A stretch of 63,815 nucleotides of DNA, the filler included, from Octopus bimaculoides (Eukaryota): assembly GCF_001194135.2 (NCBI RefSeq). It is 5 parts of 3 records of this genome, joined end to end, with 100 filler letters (N's around TTAATTAATTAA, not from the genome) between each part and the next. Parts side by side here need not be neighbours in the genome. Positions count along the whole stretch, not along the records: positions 1 to 26,706 come from NC_068986.1; 4 more parts are not named here. One strand, 5' to 3'. Under the pieces are notes generated by a model that made no database searches, had not been told where the DNA came from, and was given only the letters and a program-made list of their open reading frames with translations. Shown piece by piece: positions 1,176 to 26,706 of the stretch (its first letter is position 1; each line of letters opens with the position of its first letter). Made by a program: the position numbers and the translations under genes.

Positions 1176-2049
1176 TATACATGCATATGTATATATGTGT
1201 GTGTTTGTGTGTATGTGAGTGCGTATGTGTAAGTATGTATGTATTTATACAAATACATGTGTGTGTATATATATATATATATATATNNNNNNNNNNNNNN
1301 NNNNNNNNNNNNNNNNNNNNNNNNNNNNNNNNNNNNNNNNNNNNNNNNNNNNNNNNNNNNNNNNNNNNNNNNNNNNNNNNNNNNNNNNNNNNNNNNNNNN
1401 NNNNNNNNNNNNNNNNNNNNNNNNNNNNNNNNNNNNNNNNNNNNNNNNNNNNNNNNNNNNNNNNNNNNNNNNNNNNNNNNNNNNNNNNNNNNNNNNNNNN
1501 NNNNNNNNNNNNNNNNNNNNNNNNNNNNNNNNNNNNNNNNNNNNNNNNNNNNNNNNNNNNNNNNNNNNNNNNNNNNNNNNNNNNNNNNNNNNNNNNNNNN
1601 NNNNNNNNNNNNNNNNNNNNNNNNNNNNNNNNNNNNNNNNNNNNNNNNNNNNNNNNNNNNNNNNNNNNNNNNNNNNNNNNNNNNNNNNNNNNNNNNNNNN
1701 NNNNNNNNNNNNNNNNNNNNNNNNNNNNNNNNNNNNNNNNNNNNNNNNNNNNNNNNNNNNNNNNNNNNNNNNNNNNNNNNNNNNNNNNNNNNNNNNNNNN
1801 NNNNNNNNNNNNNNNNNNNNNNNNNNNNNNNNNNNNNNNNNNNNNNNNNNNNNNNNNNNNNNNNNNNNNNNNNNNNNNNNNNNNNNNNNNNNNNNNNNNN
1901 NNNNNNNNNNNNNNNNNNNNNNNNNNNNNNNNNNNNNNNNNNNNNNNNNNNNNNNNNNNNNNNNNNNNNNNNNNNNNNNNNNNNNNNNNNNNNNNNNNNN
2001 NNNNNNNNNNNNNNNNNNNNNNNNNNNNNNNNNNNNNNNNNNNNNNNNN

Positions 2050-2080: not shown

Positions 2081-4871
2081 AAACCTGTCAGTCACCTAGT
2101 CACCTACCATTCTGGCAGACACTCTAGCCAAATTGACTACATCCTCGCCAGAAAAAGGGAAAGGTGGCTGCTTATAAATGCCAAAACCTTCCCAGGTGAA
2201 TAATTACATAGACTAAGTAGTTAGTGACTTCAGGATTAGGGCCAAGTGGTTGCCCAGAAGACGACCAGCTTGGAGAAGAAGGGTCTGGAAGCTCAAAGAC
2301 CCTGTGAATGGACAGAGATTTAGACACTTATTACTCGAAGCCTTTGACGAAATAGAGGGGGATGTAGCTTCACACGATATAGAAGACAACTGGACGTTTC
2401 TACGGGACAACCTGCTGAGGACCACTTACCAGATCTGTGGATGGTGCAAAGTCCCCTCTTGACCCAAAATAACGTGGTGGTGGAACAATGTTGTTGACAG
2501 GGCTATTAGACAAAAGAAACAGGCTTGGAAGGACTGGAAGAACAGTGGTAGCAGACTGCCAGAGGGAAGCTAAGCGACAGGTTTATTTAGCCAGAGGGGA
2601 AGCAGATAAGAAAAACTTTGCCAATGTTCTGCGCCGTGAGAGCCAAAGACTTGAAGTATTTCGTGTTGCAAGACAGTGTGTGAGAGAGAATTGTGAGAGA
2701 AATGTGTTCGCATGGATGATGGTACGCTTGCACTAAACGAGGCTGCAAAGAAAGAGGTATGGAGACGCCACTACGAAAGGTTGCTCAATAAAGAGAATGA
2801 ATGGGAGGAAGAGAGTCTGCCGAATGTCAACCCAACAGAGGGACCAGCTATCCGAGTTGACAGTACCAGGGTNNNNNNNNNNNNNNNNNNNNNNNNNNNN
2901 NNNNNNNNNNNNNNNNNNNNNNNNNNNNNNNNNNNNNNNNNNNNNNNNNNNNNNNNNNNNNNNNNNNNNNNNNNNNNNNNNNNNNNNNNNNNNNNNNNNN
3001 NNNNNNNNNNNNNNNNNNNNNNNNNNNNNNNNNNNNNNNNNNNNNNNNNNNNNNNNNNNNNNNNNNNNNNNNNNNNNNNNNNNNNNNNNNNNNNNNNNNN
3101 NNNNNNNNNNNNNNNNNNNNNNNNNNNNNNNNNNNNNNNNNNNNNNNNNNNNNNNNNNNNNNNNNNNNNNNNNNNNNNNNNNNNNNNNNNNNNNNNNNNN
3201 NNNNNNNNNNNNNNNNNNNNNNNNNNNNNNNNNNNNNNNNNNNNNNNNNNNNNNNNNNNNNNNNNNNNNNNNNNNNNNNNNNNNNNNNNNNNNNNNNNNN
3301 NNNNNNNNNNNNNNNNNNNNNNNNNNNNNNNNNNNNNNNNNNNNNNNNNNNNNNNNNNNNNNNNNNNNNNNNNNNNNNNNNNNNNNNNNNNNNNNNNNNN
3401 NNNNNNNNNNNNNNNNNNNNNNNNNNNNNNNNNNNNNNNNNNNNNNNNNNNNNNNNNNNNNNNNNNNNNNNNNNNNNNAATTCAAGACAGGATACCCCTG
3501 GGAGCTCCTCTATGCTGATGACCTTGCACTAATTGCTGAGTCACTATCAGAACTAGAGGAGAAATTTCAGGTGGGAAGCAAGGACTAGAATCGAAGGGCC
3601 TTAGAGTCAACCTAGCTAAAACCAAAGTCCTAATAAGTAGGAAGGTAGAAAAAACAAAACCCCTTCAGGTAGATGGCCCTGCTCGATCTGTAGAAAAGGC
3701 GCCGGTAGAAACTCTATAAGATGCACCCAGTGCAAGCTATGGACACATAAGAGGTGCAGCAATACCAAAGGAAGGTTAACTAGGAAGTTAGTTTTTGTAT
3801 GTAGCAAATGTTCGGGAGCAATAAACATTGTAAATGTGCAGAAAACAACTTCTGCCACATTCCAGGGAGAAAAACTAGACGTAGTTGATAACTTCCGTTA
3901 TCAAGGTGACCAAGTCAGTAGTGGGGGAAGGTGCACTGAAAATGTAGCTGCTAGAATAAGAATAGCCTGGGCAAATTTCAGAGAGCTCTTACCTCTGCTG
4001 GTGACAAAGGGCCTCTTGCTCAGAGTAAAAGGCAGACTGTATGACGCATGTGTACGAACAGCCATGCTTCATGGCAGTGAAACATGGGCCGTGACTGCTG
4101 AGGACATGCGTAGGCTCGCAAGGAATAAAGCTAGTATGCTCCGATGGATGTGTAATGTCAGTGTGCATACTAGATAGAGTGTTAGTACCTTGAGAGTTAA
4201 ACTTACGAAGCATCAGTTGTGGTGTGCAAGAAAGACGATTGCGCTGGTATGGTCATGTAGCAAGAATGGATGAGGATAGCTGTGTGAAAAAGTGCCACAC
4301 CCTAGCAGTTGAGGGAACCTGTGGAAGAGGTAGGCCCAGGAAGACCTGGGATGAGGTGGTGAGGCATGACCTTCGAGCATTTGGCCTCACCAAGGCGATG
4401 GCTTCTGACCGAGACCTTTGAAAATATGCTGTGCGTGAGAAGACCCGGCAAGCCAATTCAGACCTAAATCTCAGCCAACCCACTTATGCGAAACTTCCTT
4501 CATAGGACACTAAACTCCGCTTGCGAAGACCTATTGAGGCAAGTGAAATCGAAATCGAATTAAATTCGACGNNNNNNNNNNNNNNNNNNNNNNNNNNNNN
4601 NNNNNNNNNNNNNNNNNNNNNNNNNNNNNNNNNNNNNNNNNNNNNNNNNNNNNNNNNNNNNNNNNNNNNNNNNNNNNNNNNNNNNNNNNNNNNNNNNNNN
4701 NNNNNNNNNNNNNNNNNNNNNNNNNNNNNNNNNNNNNNNNNNNNNNNNNNNNNNNNNNNNNNNNNNNNNNNNNNNNNNNNNNNNNNNNNNNNNNNNNNNN
4801 NNNNNNNNNNNNNGAACTGGCTCCCGTGCAGGTGGCACATAAAATACACCATTTTGAGACTGGTTGGCGTT
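2078..4871 (+). mobile_element. RTE-clade LINE (APE C-term, linker, RT, PHD-like finger, 3'UTR), frameshifted, spanning two gaps
   Basis: TYHSGRHSSQIDYIL (APE end), YADD at 3511-3522, GSETWA and GRGRPRKTW motifs; multiple stops and frameshifts. Confidence 0.93.
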
Positions 4872-5760
4872 AGGACCAAGTCAGTAGTGGGGGTGGGTGC
4901 GCTGAATGTGTAGCTGCTAGAATAAGAATAGCCTGGGCAAAGTTCAGAGAACTCCTACCTCTGCTGGTGACAAAGGGCTTCTCGCTCAGAGTAAAAGGTA
5001 GACTGTATGACGCATGTGTACGAACTGCCATGCTACATGGCAGTGAAACATGGGCCATGACTGCTGAGGACATGCGTAAGCTTGCAAGGAATGAAGCCAG
5101 TATGCTCCGATGGATGTGTAATGTCAGTGTGCATACTCGACAGACAGAAAAGTTGGACCTAAGAAGCATCAGATATGGGATGCAAGAGAGACGACTGCAC
5201 TGGTATGGTCATATGGTGAGAATGGATGAGGATAGTTGTATGAAAAAGTGCCACACTCTAGCGGTTGAAGGAACCTGTGGAAGAGGTAGACCCAGGAAGA
5301 CCTGGGATGAGATGGTGAAGCATGACCTTCGAACATTAGGCCTCACCAAGGCAATGACTAGTGAAATATGCTGTGCTTGAGAAGACCCGCCCGGCAAGCC
5401 AAGTGAGACCATAACCCGTGGCCTCTGCTAGGGTGTAACCAGCCCACTTATGCATACCTTTCCTTCGTTGGACAATAAACTCTGCTTGCGAAGACCTATT
5501 GAGGCAAGTGAAATTGAAATCGAAATCAAATTTGATGATAGCACCACCTGACTGGCATCCGTTCTAGTGGAGCGCTAAGAGCACCATCCAAGTGTGATCG
5601 TTGCCAGGGTACCTGAGTTGCTCCCGTGCCGGTGGCATGTAAAAAGCACCATTCAAGTGTGATCGTTACCAGCATCGCCTTACTGGCATTTGTGCCGGTG
5701 GCACGTGAATAACAATATTCAAGCAAGGACATTGCCAGTGTCGCTGGACTGGTTCCTGTG
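4872..5760 (+). mobile_element. Second 5'-truncated RTE copy joined to the previous one
   Basis: ORF 4967-5380 (LYDACVRTAMLHGSETWA...), followed by 3'UTR repeat units. Confidence 0.9.
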
Positions 5761-5903
5761 CACATATATATATATATATGTATGGGTGCATATGCGTGTG
5801 TATGCATGTCATCATCACCATCATTACAATCATCATTTAACATACTTATGTTAATGTGTACATGAAGATATAAATATGTATAATAATAAATACACATAGA
5901 TAG

Positions 5904-6790: not shown

Positions 6791-7944
6791 GGGTTTTCGA
6801 CGGTATCGTTGGAAAAAAACAAAAAAAAACATCCAAAGCGTCACTGTGTTAGGTATAAAAGACACACACACACACACACACCACGCACTCACACAAGCGT
6901 GATCGCACGTATACACATACACACCCGTACATACATATACGCACATGTTCACACAGACACATCCTCGCGCGTGCACAATTGAAACAGAGTTGTCTCCCTG
7001 TGTATGCATATTGCATAGTATTGTCGAAATTAAAAAATACTTTAAATTGGGTCCTATGTCTTTTAAGGGCAAGACACATTGCCTTAAAAAATCTGTATGA
7101 TCGTACCTTCGATTATAGATATGTTTGAAAGGATTGACCTGGAGCTAAACAACACTATTTAAAAATATATGTATTGAACGGATGATATGCTGTATTTTTT
7201 AAATAATGAGTGTTTTATCGAATTACAGAAGGAAAAAGTCGATGAAATTTGTTTGAAATATGAACTCGAAGAATGAATTAATTCGTTTACATTGTTTCTT
7301 GACTATATGATTTACATCTTCCTGAAGCTTTTCAACTGACAAACTCTGCTCTCTTTCCTCTTTTGTCTGCGACCTTCAGTATATTCTTTCTCTGCCTGTA
7401 TTCTAGTGTTCTATTACGATTTGTCTAATATTCTAACGCTCAATATTTAAATGTATTTTCTGAAGATTTAAAATCTGTCTGTATGCACACACGCACACAC
7501 ACACACTGTTGCGCTAATATGGGAGAAGGATACCATTTTAACTGGTTCTCTGAGTTAATCAATAGTATGTGTTATTACAACGATATTGGAAGTATATTCA
7601 CTGTATGCTGAACCTGATAGATAGTAATAAAATTAAGGAAAATTCTATAAATAACTTCATACAATATATTTTATGAACATATTTAATCCTATTGCTTAAG
7701 GATTGGGAAGTAAATTCCTGTAATTGTTATATTTCCTTTACTCGTGATAAATAAGTAGTGAGTTTGCTATGGCATGGGTGATAACTTGTCAATATAAGTT
7801 CCAAGAGCACTAGAGCTATGACAGTCTAGTGGTCCTTATCTCACACTGGAGAAGTTCGAGGTAACTGAGGAGGAAATGAGACAACATTAGGCTGGTCATT
7901 GACACTATCAGCAGGCTTAACAGCTGCAGCTGGGTGGAATAAAT

Positions 7945-8132
7945 TAGCCTGAAGAATGAATTAAGTTTCAATTACTTACCTTACTGATGCTGCTTCCAAA
8001 CAATGATTTCTTTCAAGTCTCTAATATGATGGTAAGATTGCTGTATATCAGTTTCTGTTGACTAACTAATATATGAAATGACATGATGAAGAGATTCTTG
8101 TATAACAGAGAATTTGGATTTCTTGGACAACA
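7945..8132 (-). mobile_element. Tigger/pogo transposase C-terminal remnant
   Basis: KKSKFSVIQESLHHVISY...HIRDLKEIIVWKQHQ...KLNSFF; continues the 8870-10152 fragment across the TA site. Confidence 0.6.
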
Positions 8133-8765
8133 CAGGGCTTTGCAAAAGTCCTGTTACACTCGGTTTTGAGTCTTTCAAAAGGTTTTCGTCTGTGATAGAA
8201 AAAGTGCTGTCAAACATACTGAAAGTTTTACTTTTCCAACATGTGTCATTAAAACGTCTTTTCCATTGTGTACAAATCAAGATCTTTGCTCTCTTGTGCA
8301 CAGGCCACAACAAGTCTGACATCACCAAGTGGCTCAATGTTGGTTGGATGACTGTCCACAGAGTCGTGAACAGGAAAGACCTCAAAGATCGACCTTCATT
8401 AGGCAGGCCTCAAGTTGTCAACTGGTTGACTGTGAGAAAGGCCTACAAAAATTATCTGAAGCTCAAAATGACTGTGCTCACAAAGAGCAACATCTTGGTG
8501 GCCATAGTGTCCAGGGCCATCAAAGAGGAAAGCAGCAAGAGCTTGAAGTGTGTGGAAAGGCTTCTGCTCACTGATTATATGCAAAAGCAATTTGGGGAGC
8601 ACTATTGTCACTTTCTCAATGACTTGAAGTGTTATGGCAATCAGATTCTCACGTTTCTTATGATAAAAAACCTTTACATTTGATCTGATCATCAACAAGC
8701 AGAACGCAATCAGTTTCAGCCTGGACATCTCTGAGATCTGCTATGTGTCCTGACCAAGCACCCTG
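8133..8765 (+). mobile_element. maT/DD37D-like mariner, 5' half (TIR, HTH, first D region)
   Basis: TIR cagggctttgcaaaagtcctgttacac; HTH (GHNKSDITKWLNVGWMTVHRV, DRP..GRP); ...KTFT..IINKQN..SFSLDISEICYVS.TKHP. Confidence 0.88.
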
Positions 8766-8869
8766 TACATGGCTTGTGCAGTTCTCATTCTCTCTCTTCT
8801 TCTCCCTCTCTTATTTCCATTGATATTTCTGTGATTAAGTATTTTTAGCTTCATATTTCATAGCTTGGC

Positions 8870-10152
8870 TTCAAGGGATAGAAATGTGATTTCCTTGGTA
8901 CCTAGAAACTGCTTTGGTAGTGAGAGTTTAAGAAAAATGTGTGTTAAAATGACAAACACTTTTGGATATATGCATTTTCTTTGCAAGATAATGTTGATGC
9001 AAATTCTAAATAATCATCTGTTGGCATAAGAACATGTATGAGAACTACAAGAGGTACAAATCTTGAGTAAGCAGTGACAAAGTGGTTTATTGACCAATGA
9101 TGCCGTGGTGTATAAAGTGCTGCTGTCAAGTTAGCTCAGCTTTTAGGCAACAAGAATTTAGAAGCAAAGACAAGTGGTTGACTTTTTAAAAATCACTATA
9201 AAATTTGGTGATAAAATTATGGAGAAATAGACAATGCAGCAACTGAAGGAATCATTCCTTACGGGAAGAGGTCAAATGACTCAATTATGCATGAAATTCT
9301 CATTTTCTAAAACATAATGGTGTGGGGGCAGGAACAGAGTTGCTTTGATCATTACAACCTTCAAAATATCCATGTTTCTATGAATAAAGACTCCACGTCT
9401 GGTTGTAAATGAAATAAGGAATGTTTCATGGCATTGTGTTGCACAAATAGTACGCATCTTTTAAAGTTAGCAGTCAGGAGGTTAGTATATCTGTGTGATT
9501 GAAAGACAATGTACTGACAACCAGAAATTACAGTTCAAAATGCATGTCTTTAACAATTGTTACTTTTTCCTTGCATCTCATTTCTGTAGCACATAACTAC
9601 CAGGAAGATGTCTCCAAACTTTCTAGTGGTGAGGTGAAGATGCTCCTAATTTTAGACAATGCATTTGCTCAGTCAGTAAGTCACCAATTTGTCATTAATG
9701 AGCATGTTCTTACCCCACAATGGCACTTGTATTATCAAGCCAACAAATCAAAGTATGGTCATAGCATACAAGACACAATACCAGCGAAGATAGTTAAACA
9801 AAGTTCTCATGGTGTTAGAAGAGGACAGACAATCTTGGAAAGAAACATGAAGAGTAAGAACAGTCAATAACATTTTGAACTACAATCACAATTTGGCAAT
9901 ATTCAATTTAGCAGCTTTATTCTAGGCAATGAACATTACAGCTCAACCCAATATTTAGAAAAATTTTCTGCATGATATGAAAATAATATACATTTTTGAA
10001 GGATTTGGTACACGGAACTCTTATAAGTATTTCAGAGGGCAGGCAAAACAGTTGTCACAAAGATCAGCATCAGAGCCTGGCTATAATATGAAATGTTATG
10101 AAAAGAAGAAATAGTAAAATTTGTGTTAGAGCTGGCATGGATAAAAACAGAT
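8870..10152 (+). mobile_element. Decayed Tigger/pogo transposase (CENP-B HTH + DDE_1), inside the inverted block
   Basis: ALCCTNSTHLLKLAV; NYQEDVSKLSSGEVKMLLILDNA; MFLPHNGTCIIKPTNQSMVIAYK (FLPPNTTSIIQPMDQG-like); NYN..AIFNLAA. Confidence 0.78.
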
Positions 10153-10154
10153 TA

Positions 10155-10735
10155 CTGGGCTTTGCGAAAGTTCTATTACACTTGTTATGACGCTCTGAAC
10201 AAAGGACACAATGATAGTTTTATTGCTGTTAGACACATTTTTATTGTTTTAACATATAAATATATGTTTAAATATTAATATCAATCAATGTGGCTGCCTT
10301 CAGCAGTGAGCACACACTCCAGGCGAGATCTAAAGGCCACACATACATTGTGGATGAAGTCCTTCCTCATGCTGGCCCACATGCAGTTGATGGAGGACTT
10401 CAGCTCATCAACGTTGCTGTGGTGGACCTTGCAAGTCTTGCCCTCGACATGTGCCCACACCCTGTAGTCAAGGGAGTTGACTGCAGTGGCCAAAAGTCAG
10501 ACCAGAAGTTCATGTCTGACCCTAACCATTCTTACATGGTCTAGGCCATGTGGGCAGGGGTCACTGTCCTACTGAAAGACAGTTTGCCTTCTTCGTGATC
10601 TTTCTCACCCAGGGCAGGACTTTTGTGGCCAAGATGTCCCTTTAGTTGCTGCAATGAGCCTGTAACCAGCCACAAACCACACCAGCAGCATCTTCTTGCC
10701 ATTCGAAGCCATAACGCTGAGCATCATCAAAGAAG
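10155..10735 (-). mobile_element. maT/DD37D-like mariner, 3' half (inverted) with TIR and TA
   Basis: SLMMLSVMASNGKKM...VFQ.D...NSLDYRVWAHVEGK...FRSRLECVLTAEGSHID*; TIR at 10155-10183 preceded by TA. Confidence 0.88.
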
Positions 10736-10750
10736 TCACAACAAACACCA

Positions 10751-11828
10751 CTGTACATGACTTGTACAGCTCTAACAAGCTACTCCTCTACTCCTAGCTT
10801 CCTTTGAGACCACTAGATAAGAGAGTGGGAAACCCTGTTGAAAACTTTCTCCAGGTCGACAAAAGCTAAGTACAATGGTTTACTTTTGCCCAAATACTTT
10901 TCTTGCAACTGTCTCACTAGGAAGATGGTATCTGTGGTACTTCTCTCAGGCAGAAAACTAAACTGCATCTCATCTAGTTTAATTCTATTCCTAATCAACT
11001 GAGCTATAACTTTCTCTGTAATTTTCATGACCTGGTCCAGCAATTTGATACCTCTGTAGTTGTTTCAATCTAAGGCATCACCTTTACCCTTGTAGCAGCT
11101 GACTATAATACTGTTACACCAGTCTTTGGGGATGACGCTCTCCTGAATAACTTGATTAGCTATGCGAGCGACTAGGCTGAATCCCACGCCACCAGATATT
11201 TTAATCATCTCAGCAGTGATACCCAATGGTCCAGGGGCTTTCTCAGCCTTCTTATCATTAATTGCCTCATCTATTATTCTGCTATCAACTGTGATGGCTA
11301 GTTCCTCAATTGATTTGATATTTGAAAGACTCTCCTTCTCCCAATTATTCTCCACATTTAATAACCTTTCATAATGGCATCTTCATGCATCTTTCTTTTC
11401 TGAGTCATTAAGTGCAAGCATTACCATTATTCATTTGCAAACATTTCTCACCCACCACATCTCTATTCTCTCTGATACACTACTTTGCAATCATGCTGTA
11501 GAACATTGGCAAACCTCTCATCTTCTGCTATTCCTTTTGCTATGTAAACGTCTCACCTAGCCTCCCTTCTGGCTCCCTGATAATGCTTCCACCGTTTTCC
11601 CAGTCTTTCCAAGCCTGTCTCTTTGCTTTCATAGCACTGTCCACTTCCTTGTTTCACCACCATGTCACCCTTGGCCTAGCTGGGACTTTGCATGTCTCGC
11701 AGGAACTTGCAGTTGTCCTCTGAGCTATTTTTCCCTTCTTCCTCCTTCTCTCTATCATCAGAAGCTTCCAGTAGAATGTCTTTAAGTTTTTGTTGGTTTG
11801 CTGGGTCTTTGAGCTTCCATAATCTTTT
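10751..11828 (-). mobile_element. RTE LINE internal fragment (linker + RT N-terminal half)
   Basis: KAPGPLGITAEMIK; DEMQFSF..STTDTIFLVRQLQEK..LYLAFVDLEK; RAVQVMY. Confidence 0.9.
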
Positions 11829-11829
11829 C

Positions 11830-11975
11830 TGCATAGTCCACCAAATTCACTCACAAAGCATTGGTCAACCCAAGGCTATAATAGAAGACTTTTACCCAAG
11901 ATATTGTGCAATGGGACTAAACTTGAAACCACATGACTGTAAAACAAACTTCTTAATCACATAGCCATGCCTGGC
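11830..11975 (-). mobile_element. tRNA-derived SINE family B, head fragment
   Basis: Similar to the 5' part of the copies at 23367-23772 and 55931-56411. Confidence 0.7.
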
Positions 11976-12379
11976 TGCTGTTTTTAGGAAGTCAAGTATA
12001 CACAGTGCAGGCTCTTCCAATTGTGCAATTCAATGTTTTGTTATCTACAGAGTTGTCCGATGTTATGTTGTCATTTGTAGTATGTTGTCTTTTGTAGGGC
12101 AGTGTTACTTTATGTTGCCTTGCCTTTTGTCTATGGTGCTGTATAGTGTTGTCTAACATTGTTGCTGTCTTTCATAGTATGATATTGTGTAGTGTTGCTT
12201 TGTTTAATGTTGGTTTGTTGTGTTGTAATTTGAAGCACCTTCTCTCCTAATCAATTTTCACTTATTCTCATCATGCCAAACAAGTCATTCAATTATTTAT
12301 CAATGTAAATATTGAAATACCACTGTTTTGCAACATGAGGTGGTATTTTATCTTCTCACCGACTCAGCATGCTTGTACT

Positions 12380-12530
12380 TAGTAATCAGATAAATGACTG
12401 GCGTAACAGTACAGCTATCAATGATGAGTGGGTGAAACTCTTTCAAGGAATAGGGAACAACTGTGGGGAGCTAATAGCACTAGATTGTGTGACAGAAGAA
12501 TTTAAGATAATATGAAAATCTTCATGGCTA
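12380..12530 (+). mobile_element. Possible Penelope-like RT fragment
   Basis: NQINDWRNSTAINDEWVKLFQGIGNNC resembles the NQW.NT..VI.WF motif of PLE RTs (by eye). Confidence 0.35.

Positions 12531-26660: not shown

Positions 26661-26668
<8 letters not shown>
26013..26668. repeat. Long imperfect inverted repeat (arms about 26013-26180 and 26501-26668)
   Basis: Reverse complement of the left arm aligns with the right arm over ~165 nt, including the (TAT)n tail; roughly 75-80% by eye. Confidence 0.8.

Positions 26669-26706
<38 letters not shown>

What the first reader, a model, noticed from the sequence alone, without database searches (positions are those of the whole stretch)
7945..10774. A ~2-kb inversion (8766-10735) reconstructable from a mariner nested in a Tigger
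Seen directly, three independent lines. (1) The mariner 5' half on + ends ...AAG CAC CCT G at 8765 and the 3' half on - starts CT TCT TTG ATG at 10735; joined, they give KHP-A-SLMM with no base lost. (2) The two TIRs (8133-8161, 10155-10183; 24/29 identical) are in direct rather than inverted orientation. (3) The host Tigger reads + inside the block up to the TA at 10153-10154 and continues on - outside the block from 8132, rejoining as ...KNRL-LSKKSKF. Inference: the mariner inserted at a TA in a minus-strand Tigger and the block was later flipped. This is a base-resolved structural variant, possibly polymorphic.
Basis: partly seen in the sequence, partly recalled or inferred. Interest (0 to 1): 0.72.

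Follow-up and report, generated by a model that had tools for sequence, protein, structure and literature searches.

The report
Old small inversion splitting nested transposons
A roughly 2-kb stretch of transposon debris, probably in an octopus-type genome, was flipped long ago, and the cut can be placed to the base because it split a transposon in two; it is a tidy but ordinary structural change with a recognisable DNA-repair scar.

Summary
Joining 8133-8765 (+) to the reverse complement of 10155-10735 gives a 1214-bp Tc1/mariner-superfamily element. It is colinear end to end with intact relatives, with no gap at the join (TKHP|ASLMM against invariant TKHPASVMM). Both halves are equally diverged from an intact 1275-bp relative (74.3% and 74.9%). 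Relatives carry the same 28-bp terminal repeat flanked by TA, so 8133 and 10155 are true termini that now lie in direct orientation. The host is a decayed pogo-superfamily (DDE_1) element; the "Tigger" family itself was not tested.

- **Filler, not flipped DNA.** 8766-8785 is a 20-bp copy of 10754-10773, which lies inside a LINE reverse-transcriptase gene next to the other breakpoint. The copy was primed on a shared CTG. This is the signature of end joining with a templated insertion, so the flipped DNA is 8786-10735.
- **The far end is not clean.** The LINE is cut mid-gene at 10736, its 3' part is absent nearby, and the host element's 5' terminus is missing.
- **The event looks old.** The filler differs from its template at 3 of 20 bases, much like the two terminal repeats differ from each other. 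Polymorphism is therefore unlikely.

No inverted repeats lie at the breakpoints. Misassembly cannot be excluded without reads but is unlikely. Interest is low to moderate.

The parts
7822..8130 (-). 3' part of the decayed pogo/Tigger-like host element (C-terminal coding remnant and 3' untranslated end). The left limit is tentative: a candidate terminal repeat CAGTCTAGTGGTCCTTATCTCAC at 7822.
   Evidence: Read by eye on the - strand..LSKKSKF...LKEIIVWKQ..LKLNSFF, then stops. The candidate terminus at 7822 is unique in the window and has no partner. No tool-based homology supports this part.
8131..8132 (.). Degenerate copy (CA) of the TA target-site duplication of the inner element.
   Evidence: Relatives are flanked by TA.
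8133..8765 (+). 5' half of the Tc1/mariner-superfamily element: terminal repeat 8133-8160, helix-turn-helix region and first part of the catalytic domain, ending ..TKHP + G.
   Evidence: It is 74.3% identical to intact element L001, and the terminal repeat matches the family.
8763..8765 (+). CTG microhomology shared by the mariner-type break end and the LINE (10751-10753). It lies within a 10-of-12 imperfect match, CAAGCACC-CTG against CAAACACCACTG.
8766..8785 (+). 20-bp filler TACATGGCTTGTGCAGTTCT: a templated copy of LINE bases 10754-10773 in the same orientation, now matching at 17 of 20.
   Evidence: D4. (0 of 2956 random pairs reach 20/23). (only two copies in the window); read on the - strand it encodes TAQAMY, against RAVQAMY in the LINE family. 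It is not part of the mariner-type element.
8786..10152 (+). Flipped block, part 1: 5' part of the pogo/Tigger-like host element. About 80 bp of untranslated leader are followed by a decayed transposase with many frameshifts and stops. Its 5' terminal repeat is absent.
   Evidence: Frame-corrected translation hits Pfam DDE_1 at E=2e-5, 24.7 bits; a single frame gives E=0.013. No terminal-repeat partner was found.
10153..10154 (.). TA target-site duplication next to the 3' terminus of the inner element.
10155..10735 (-). Flipped block, part 2: 3' half of the Tc1/mariner-superfamily element (from ASLMMLSVMASNGKK.. to the stop, 3' untranslated end and terminal repeat 10155-10182).
   Evidence: It is 74.9% identical to L001, and its 3' end resembles that of L003/L004.
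10736..11835 (-). LINE fragment (reverse transcriptase of the RVT_1 + PHD type), cut within the RT after ..VQVMYSGVCC at 10736. It holds the template (10754-10773) for the filler. The right limit is approximate, about 11835-11990.
   Evidence: RVT_1 hit at E=5e-7 covering profile positions 6-106 of 205 and ending near 10753. Homologues continue ..MYRGATSKVRVNN... The 3' part was not found nearby.

Best explanation
This is a fossil of an old, probably fixed, inversion of about 1.95 kb in transposon-derived, apparently non-coding DNA of an octopus-type genome.

Order of events. A pogo/Tigger-like element sat on the - strand. A 1.2-kb Tc1/mariner-superfamily element then inserted into a TA in its 3' coding part. 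A LINE fragment lay, or came to lie, on the far side.

The rearrangement. Later the DNA broke at least twice: once inside the mariner-type element (between today's 8765 and 10735) and once at or in the LINE (left of today's 10736). The intervening piece was re-ligated in reverse by end joining.

The proximal join. The 3' end ...CACCCTG first annealed to the resected other end at a CTG lying 15 nt in from that end. It was extended by 20 nt on the LINE strand, came off, and was then ligated to the flipped fragment. That left the filler at 8766-8785. This is the pattern described for polymerase-theta-type (alternative) end joining.

The distal join. The join at 10735|10736 is blunt. The LINE's 3' part and the host element's 5' terminus were lost in the same event or earlier.

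Shown: the split, its exactness, the orientation of the termini, the filler and where its template lies, and the absence of breakpoint inverted repeats. Inferred: the repair pathway, the order of the steps, and the age.
For: The rejoined element is colinear with intact relatives at protein level and at DNA level. There is no indel at the join and both halves are equally diverged.

The terminal repeats match the family termini, which carry a TA duplication, yet here they lie in direct orientation.

The 20/23 direct repeat sits at both breakpoints. None of 2956 random window pairs reached that score, and the motif occurs only twice in the window.

The copy at 10751-10773 lies in frame inside a LINE RT. 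The copy at 8766-8785 has no LINE context on either side, so the direction of copying is LINE to junction.

The polarity fits extension of the left end's 3' terminus on the bottom strand of the right end, as read directly from the sequence.

The microhomology lies at the 3' terminus and 15 nt into the other flank, and the insertion is 20 bp. Both fall in the ranges reported for polymerase-theta end joining: a search of up to about 15 nt into each flank and templated insertions of 3-30 bp (PMC7165422). Extension of one break end on the other with minimal priming is also described (PMC4032859).

Against the family consensus RAVQAMY, two of the three filler/template differences are derived in the filler and one in the template. 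The two copies therefore diverged independently after copying. Their divergence (3/20) is similar to that between the two terminal repeats (5/29), which are perfect in intact relatives.

The longest exact inverted match around the two breakpoints is 7 nt. There are no N runs between 4814 and 26706.
Against: - The ancestral partner of 10736 cannot be reconstructed. The LINE's 3' part and the host element's 5' terminus are missing, so the event may have had more than two breaks, or the LINE may already have been truncated.
- A replication-based template switch would leave the same scar.
- Dating rests on 3 differences in 20 bases, so the error is very wide.
- No reads, second assembly or orthologous locus could be obtained. 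Neither correctness of the assembly nor fixation is demonstrated.
- The host element's continuity left of 8132 rests on reading by eye.
Confidence: 0.6

Rival explanations
1. The inversion is the same, but it arose by replication-based template switching (fork stalling and template switching, or microhomology-mediated break-induced replication) rather than by rejoining of two double-strand breaks. The nascent strand copied the mariner-type element up to 8765, switched on the CTG microhomology to the LINE for 20 nt, then switched to the opposite strand.
For: The junction shows microhomology plus a short templated insertion. Such insertions are also attributed to template-switching replication (PMC8421209, abstract listed). 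Missing material at the distal side fits a complex, multi-switch event.
Against: The other junction (10735|10736) is blunt, and the mariner-type element lost no base. That is simplest with a single clean break whose two ends were both kept. The insertion length and the position of the microhomology fit end joining equally well.
Confidence: 0.2
2. The inversion is an assembly artefact and does not exist in the animal.
For: The window comes from a draft assembly with three runs of N and is repeat-rich. No reads or second assembly could be consulted, and none of ten open reading frames from the region is on record elsewhere.
Against: The region 4814-26706 has no gap. The breakpoints share no inverted repeat longer than 7 nt that could mislead an assembler. 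The 20-bp filler differs from its template at 3 positions, which an assembler would not invent. No other copy of either transposon exists in the window to be confused with.
Confidence: 0.05
3. There was no inversion. Two independent, oppositely oriented, truncated copies of the same Tc1/mariner family happen to lie 2 kb apart.
For: Truncated transposon copies are common in this window.
Against: The two fragments are complementary to the base and in frame, and they have equal divergence from a relative. One is flanked by TA and the other by CA. Their outer flanks continue one another as the two parts of one pogo-like element (and reading by eye). Coincidence at a single base in a 1.2-kb element is about 1 in 1000 before the other agreements are counted.
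Confidence: 0.01
4. The inversion was caused by recombination between inverted repeats, by aberrant transposition using transposon ends, or by LINE twin priming.
For: Transposons are present at and around both breakpoints. Most human inversions under 2 kb are LINE twin-priming products (bioRxiv 10.1101/2021.12.20.472354, abstract listed).
Against: There are no inverted repeats at the breakpoints. Neither breakpoint is at a transposon terminus: 8765 is mid-element and 10736 is mid-RT. The inverted DNA is not LINE sequence, and the LINE is truncated at its 3' side, the opposite of what target-primed reverse transcription leaves.
Confidence: 0.03

Closest known systems
End-joining inversions with templated insertions (polymerase-theta-mediated / alternative end joining scars)
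   Same: There is a terminal microhomology (CTG). The 20-bp insertion is identical in origin to DNA flanking the other break end. The template starts 15 nt from that end. The polarity fits 3' extension on the resected partner (PMC7165422, PMC4032859).
   Different: The enzyme cannot be tested. The template is at the other break of a two-break rearrangement rather than across a single break. The scar has since diverged at 3 of 20 positions.
Tc1/mariner superfamily elements, nearest spacing classes DD37D (maT) and DD34D (mariner)
   Same: The element is about 1.2-1.4 kb with 28-bp terminal inverted repeats and a TA duplication. Intact relatives carry a helix-turn-helix plus DDE_3 transposase of about 331 aa.
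   Different: Intact relatives have 36 residues between the second and third catalytic D, not 34. No phylogeny was done. The copy here is dead: it has stops, frameshifts and a deleted start region.
pogo superfamily (Tigger, pogoR, Passer and others; PMC7386202)
   Same: It has a DDE_1-type catalytic remnant, a conceptual protein of about 490 aa, and a reading that resembles the helix-turn-helix and C-terminal regions (by eye).
   Different: The DNA-binding motifs were not detected by hmmscan. The terminal repeats are not paired, and assignment to the Tigger family was not tested.
Inversions with inverted duplications from staggered breaks, and inversions by recombination between inverted repeats
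   Same: A short duplication is associated with the breakpoints.
   Different: The duplication here is direct, single and 20 bp, and no inverted homology lies at the breakpoints. Neither model fits.

Membership tests
Tc1/mariner superfamily | Terminal inverted repeats of the family at both ends | tested here: met
   8133-8160 and 10155-10182 match the perfect termini of intact relatives L001, L003 and L004. Here they lie in direct orientation because of the flip.
Tc1/mariner superfamily | TA target-site duplication | tested here: inconclusive
   TA at 10153-10154 but CA at 8131-8132. Relatives are flanked by TA on both sides. One substitution would explain the difference.
Tc1/mariner superfamily | Helix-turn-helix plus DDE_3/DDD transposase of about 330-345 aa | tested here: met
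   100% coverage and 48-56% identity to 331-335-aa proteins that carry DDE_3. The decayed copy itself gives only weak helix-turn-helix hits.
mariner family proper (DD34D) | 34 residues between the second and third catalytic aspartates | tested here: not met
   The spacing is 36 residues in seven intact relatives.
pogo superfamily / Tigger | DDE_1 catalytic domain | tested here: met
   PF03184 at E=2e-5, 24.7 bits against a cutoff of 22, on the frame-corrected + strand translation.
pogo superfamily / Tigger | CENP-B_N and/or HTH_Tnp_Tc5 DNA-binding motifs | tested here: inconclusive
   hmmscan reported neither at E<=1. By eye there is a ..WF..KA..LG...AK.SG.LFKNHYKI pattern. The element is heavily decayed.
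pogo superfamily / Tigger | Paired terminal inverted repeats with TA duplication; placement in the Tigger clade | tested here: not met
   The candidate 3' terminus at 7822 has no partner in the window. No homologues were retrieved for a tree. The 5' terminus appears to be lost.
Clean two-break inversion | Both junctions, when un-flipped, restore continuous ancestral sequences | tested here: inconclusive
   The proximal junction restores the mariner-type element exactly. The distal junction would place a host-element leader against a LINE cut mid-RT, and the missing parts are not nearby.
Templated-insertion end joining (polymerase-theta type) | Junctional microhomology plus a 3-30-bp insertion copied from DNA flanking a break end | tested here: met
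   There is a CTG microhomology and a 20-bp copy of 10754-10773, with the template starting 15 nt from the other end. Reference ranges are from PMC7165422.
Templated-insertion end joining (polymerase-theta type) | Dependence on polymerase theta | not testable with these tools
   This needs genetics.
Inversion by recombination between inverted repeats | Inverted homologous segments at both breakpoints | tested here: not met
   The longest exact inverted match is 7 nt, and no inverted pair lies at the breakpoints.
LINE twin-priming inversion | The inverted segment is LINE sequence with an intact 3' end | tested here: not met
   The inverted DNA is DNA-transposon sequence, and the LINE is truncated at its 3' side.

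The most novel reading that the evidence does not exclude
The locus preserves a datable, base-resolved germ-line repair event in a cephalopod. The scar shows one break end being extended on the other break end of a two-break rearrangement before the excised piece was re-ligated in reverse. If this holds up, split nested transposons could be mined genome-wide to catalogue ancient small inversions and their repair signatures in lineages where no population or outgroup data exist. A second possibility is that the inner element belongs to a Tc1/mariner group with unusual 36-residue spacing and apparently intact copies in marine samples, which has not been placed in the current family scheme.
Probability: 0.35. 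Interest if true: 0.4.

Novelty: new member of a known kind. Interest (0 to 1): 0.3.

Why it matters
The locus has no evident function, being dead transposons inside dead transposons. Its value is methodological. Because the break fell inside a transposon whose full sequence is known from relatives, the breakpoint, the absence of base loss and a 20-bp templated filler can all be read directly. That gives a clear example of alternative end joining shaping an invertebrate genome. It also shows that the naive 'reverse-complement the block' reconstruction is off by 20 bp at one edge and incomplete at the other. For annotation, the two half-elements should be recorded as one split copy.

Tried and rejected
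- **Independent records of the junctions.** Ten open reading frames from the region, including ones spanning each junction, were looked up by exact sequence. None is in the collection, so there is no second assembly and no direct identification of the organism.
- **Homologues of the host element.** A 402-aa conceptual translation gave no hit.
- **Exhaustive representative search for the host element.** I ran no further search on short exact reading frames, which would be too weak.
- **Six-frame Pfam scan of 7600-12400.** It gave only weak hits before frame correction.
- **Missing 3' part of the LINE.** A translated search of the window found other copies on the + strand at 3490-4451, 4874-5390 and 23791-24636, but nothing adjacent on the - strand.
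- **Partner for the candidate host-element terminus at 7822.** None was found.
- **Extended similarity of the flanks outside the two mariner-type termini.** This would have suggested a duplication, but only the terminal repeat itself aligns.
- **Possible extension of the filler to about 8805.** The alignment there is low-complexity and gapped, so it was left open.
- **DNA of the best LINE homologue.** The look-up for P0059 failed. The Octopus sinensis LINE copy stops short of the template region.
- **Models considered and rejected.** Staggered-break, inverted-repeat recombination, transposase-mediated and twin-priming models were rejected on anatomy.
Full report
**What is there**

The piece is a draft-quality, repeat-rich animal sequence. 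It has three runs of N (1287-2049, 2873-3478, 4572-4813) but none between 4814 and 26706.

Its LINE fragments are closest to predicted proteins of Argonauta hians and Octopus sinensis. A random O. sinensis locus shares several of the window's repeat families at 70-85% identity. The source is therefore probably an octopod, though the species was not identified. Exact look-ups of ten local reading frames found nothing.

**The inner element**

The + strand from 8133 and the - strand from 10735 down to 10155 carry the two halves of one Tc1/mariner-superfamily element.

- *Protein level.* A conceptual protein made by joining them retrieved seven intact transposases of 331-335 aa, each covering 100% of the query at 48-56% identity. 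In the alignment the join (..LTKHP | ASLMMLSV..) falls in a run of invariant columns (K161, P163, A164, S165, M167, M168) with no gap.
- *DNA level.* The 633 + 581 = 1214-bp rejoined element aligns end to end with an intact 1275-bp element recovered from a public run (L001). Identity is 74.3% for the 5' half and 74.9% for the 3' half. The join reads GACCAAGCACCCTG|CTTCTTTGATGATG against GACCAAGCACCCAG|CCTCTGTGATGATG.
- *Termini.* Intact relatives end in perfect inverted repeats (CAGGGTCTTGCAAAAGTTCTGTTACACT in L003/L004, CCGGGCTTTGCAAAAGTTCTGTTACACT in L001), and L003/L004 show the TA duplication. The window's two copies, 8133-8161 and 10155-10183, match this sequence and each other at 24 of 29 positions, but they lie in direct orientation. 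TA flanks the 3' terminus (10153-10154) and CA flanks the 5' terminus (8131-8132).

The name 'mariner' holds only at superfamily level. Intact relatives have 36 residues between the second and third catalytic aspartates, not the 34 of mariner proper.

**The host element**

Inside the block the + strand carries a badly decayed transposase.

- A single frame gives a weak DDE_1 hit (E=0.013).
- A hand frame-corrected translation of 8865-10100 gives DDE_1 at E=2e-5 and 24.7 bits, above Pfam's 22-bit cutoff. DDE_1 is the catalytic domain of the pogo superfamily, which includes Tigger (PMC7386202).
- The DNA-binding motifs were not detected, and no homologues could be retrieved. 'Tigger' as a family is therefore untested.
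- The continuation on the - strand left of 8132 is supported only by reading. The join ..KNRL|LSKKSKF.. is in frame once one TA is removed, and about 45 codons further on there is a C-terminal-looking ..LKEIIVWKQ..LKLNSFF before stops accumulate.
- The total conceptual length (about 430 + 60 codons) is reasonable for a pogo-type transposase.
- A possible 3' terminus, CAGTCTAGTGGTCCTTATCTCAC at 7822, has no partner anywhere in the window. The host element's 5' terminus is therefore missing.

A second direct repeat sits on both breakpoints: 8763-8785 CTGTACATGGCTTGTGCAGTTCT and 10751-10773 CTGTACATGACTTGTACAGCTCT, matching at 20 of 23 (family D4). None of 2956 random pairs of windows from the same contig reached 20/23, and the best reached 19 once. 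The degenerate 20-mer occurs only at these two places in the window.

The right-hand copy is native sequence of a LINE on the - strand.

- The RVT_1 match covers profile positions 6-106 of 205 and ends at about 10753.
- The reading ..GVEE*LVRAVQVMYSGVCC aligns with ..GVEEWLVRAVQAMYRGATSKVRVNN.. in homologues.
- The LINE thus runs to the very breakpoint at 10736 and is cut in the middle of its reverse transcriptase. Its 3' part is not on the - strand anywhere nearby.

The left-hand copy has no LINE context. To its left is the mariner-type element, whose relatives continue with different sequence. To its right any similarity is low-complexity and uncertain.

The direction of copying is therefore LINE to junction, and 8766-8785 is a 20-bp filler, not part of the flipped ancestral DNA. 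The shared CTG (8763-8765 and 10751-10753) lies within a 10-of-12 imperfect match, CAAGCACC-CTG against CAAACACCACTG.

**Mechanism**

The polarity is what one expects if the left break end was processed as follows:

1. The top-strand 3' end ...CACCCTG annealed to the resected bottom strand of the right break end, at a CTG 15 nt in from that end.
2. It was extended by 20 nt on that strand and then dissociated.
3. It was finally ligated to the far end of the excised fragment. The fragment's near end (the mariner-type 3' half) was joined bluntly to the right end at 10735|10736.

This matches the published description of polymerase-theta-mediated end joining. That pathway searches for microhomology from the 3' terminus up to about 15 nt into each flank, and aborted synthesis leaves templated insertions of 3-30 bp (PMC7165422). 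One break end being extended on the other with minimal priming is also described (PMC4032859).

The pathway is an inference. A replication-based template switch would leave the same scar and is the main rival.

Several other models do not fit.

- Recombination between inverted repeats is excluded by the absence of inverted homology; the longest exact inverted match is 7 nt.
- Staggered-break models predict inverted duplications at both ends, not one direct 20-mer.
- Transposase-mediated models need breakpoints at element termini, which these are not.
- LINE twin priming inverts LINE sequence and leaves an intact 3' end, the opposite of what is seen.

**Limits of the reconstruction**

Un-flipping 8786-10735 restores the mariner-type element exactly. 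At the other side, however, it places about 80 bp of host-element leader directly against a LINE cut mid-gene.

Either the LINE's 3' part and the host element's 5' terminus were deleted in the same event (three or more breaks), or that junction was already rearranged. This cannot be settled without an un-inverted orthologue.

**Age**

The filler and its template must have been identical when made, and they now differ at 3 of 20 positions. Against the LINE family consensus (RAVQAMY), two of the changes are in the filler and one is in the template, so both copies have drifted.

The two terminal repeats, perfect in intact relatives, differ at 5 of 29. On these very small numbers the inversion is old and not much younger than the insertion of the inner element. 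The estimate has a wide error and is not a substitute for population data.

**Artefact?**

There are several reasons to doubt misassembly.

- There is no gap in the region.
- The breakpoints carry no inverted repeat that could mislead an assembler.
- The filler is a diverged copy rather than an exact one.
- No second copy of either DNA transposon exists in the window.

I rate misassembly at about 5%, but only reads can exclude it.

**Verdict**

It needs four corrections: the block edge, the distal end, the age and the family names. The kind of event is well known, and the locus has no apparent function. Its merit is as an unusually legible example of a repair scar.

Noticed in passing
window 1287-2049, 2873-3478, 4572-4813: Three runs of N show that this is a scaffolded draft assembly. 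The finding itself lies in an uninterrupted stretch, 4814-26706.
   Followed up: partly
window 3479-4571, 4814-5762, 23791-24975 (+ strand); 2271-2863 (+): There are several further LINE fragments of the same RT + PHD-finger type. Two 3' parts that are 82% alike lie on either side of the N run at 4572-4813, and a third is 88% like the first. None is the missing 3' part of the LINE at 10736.
   Followed up: partly
L001 (Logan SRR19345946), L002-L004 (TARA ocean metagenome scaffolds and Logan ERR10921348): These are apparently intact relatives of the inner element, with open 331-332-aa transposase genes, perfect 28-30-bp terminal repeats and a TA duplication. They have 36 residues between the last two catalytic aspartates, a spacing I did not find among the named Tc1/mariner families in the papers consulted. 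No phylogeny was done.
   Followed up: partly
proteins P0021 and P0059: Reverse transcriptases labelled Escherichia coli and Herbaspirillum sp. are 71-73% identical to this animal LINE. One of them carries a PHD finger. They are most likely animal DNA contaminating bacterial or metagenome records.
   Followed up: no
window 11836-11973 and 23636-23772; O. sinensis L005 5085-5204: A short unclassified repeat (72-79% identity between copies) abuts the 5'-truncated end of the LINE fragment. It recurs in the window and in Octopus sinensis.
   Followed up: no
window 26009-26177 and 26503-26672: An inverted repeat of about 170 bp at 82% identity, with arms about 325 bp apart, lies near the end of the piece. 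It is next to a simple TA-type repeat at 26664-26706. It may be a foldback or miniature element.
   Followed up: no
window 8235-8260 (relative to L001 positions ~140-165): The inner element has lost about 19 bp covering the start codon of its transposase. It also carries stops and frameshifts, mainly in the 3' half, so it was dead or decayed long ago.
   Followed up: partly
window 12064-12097, 12219-12235: Tandem 17-mers (TATGTTGTCATTTGTAG) lie in a T/G-rich low-complexity stretch just beyond the LINE fragment.
   Followed up: no
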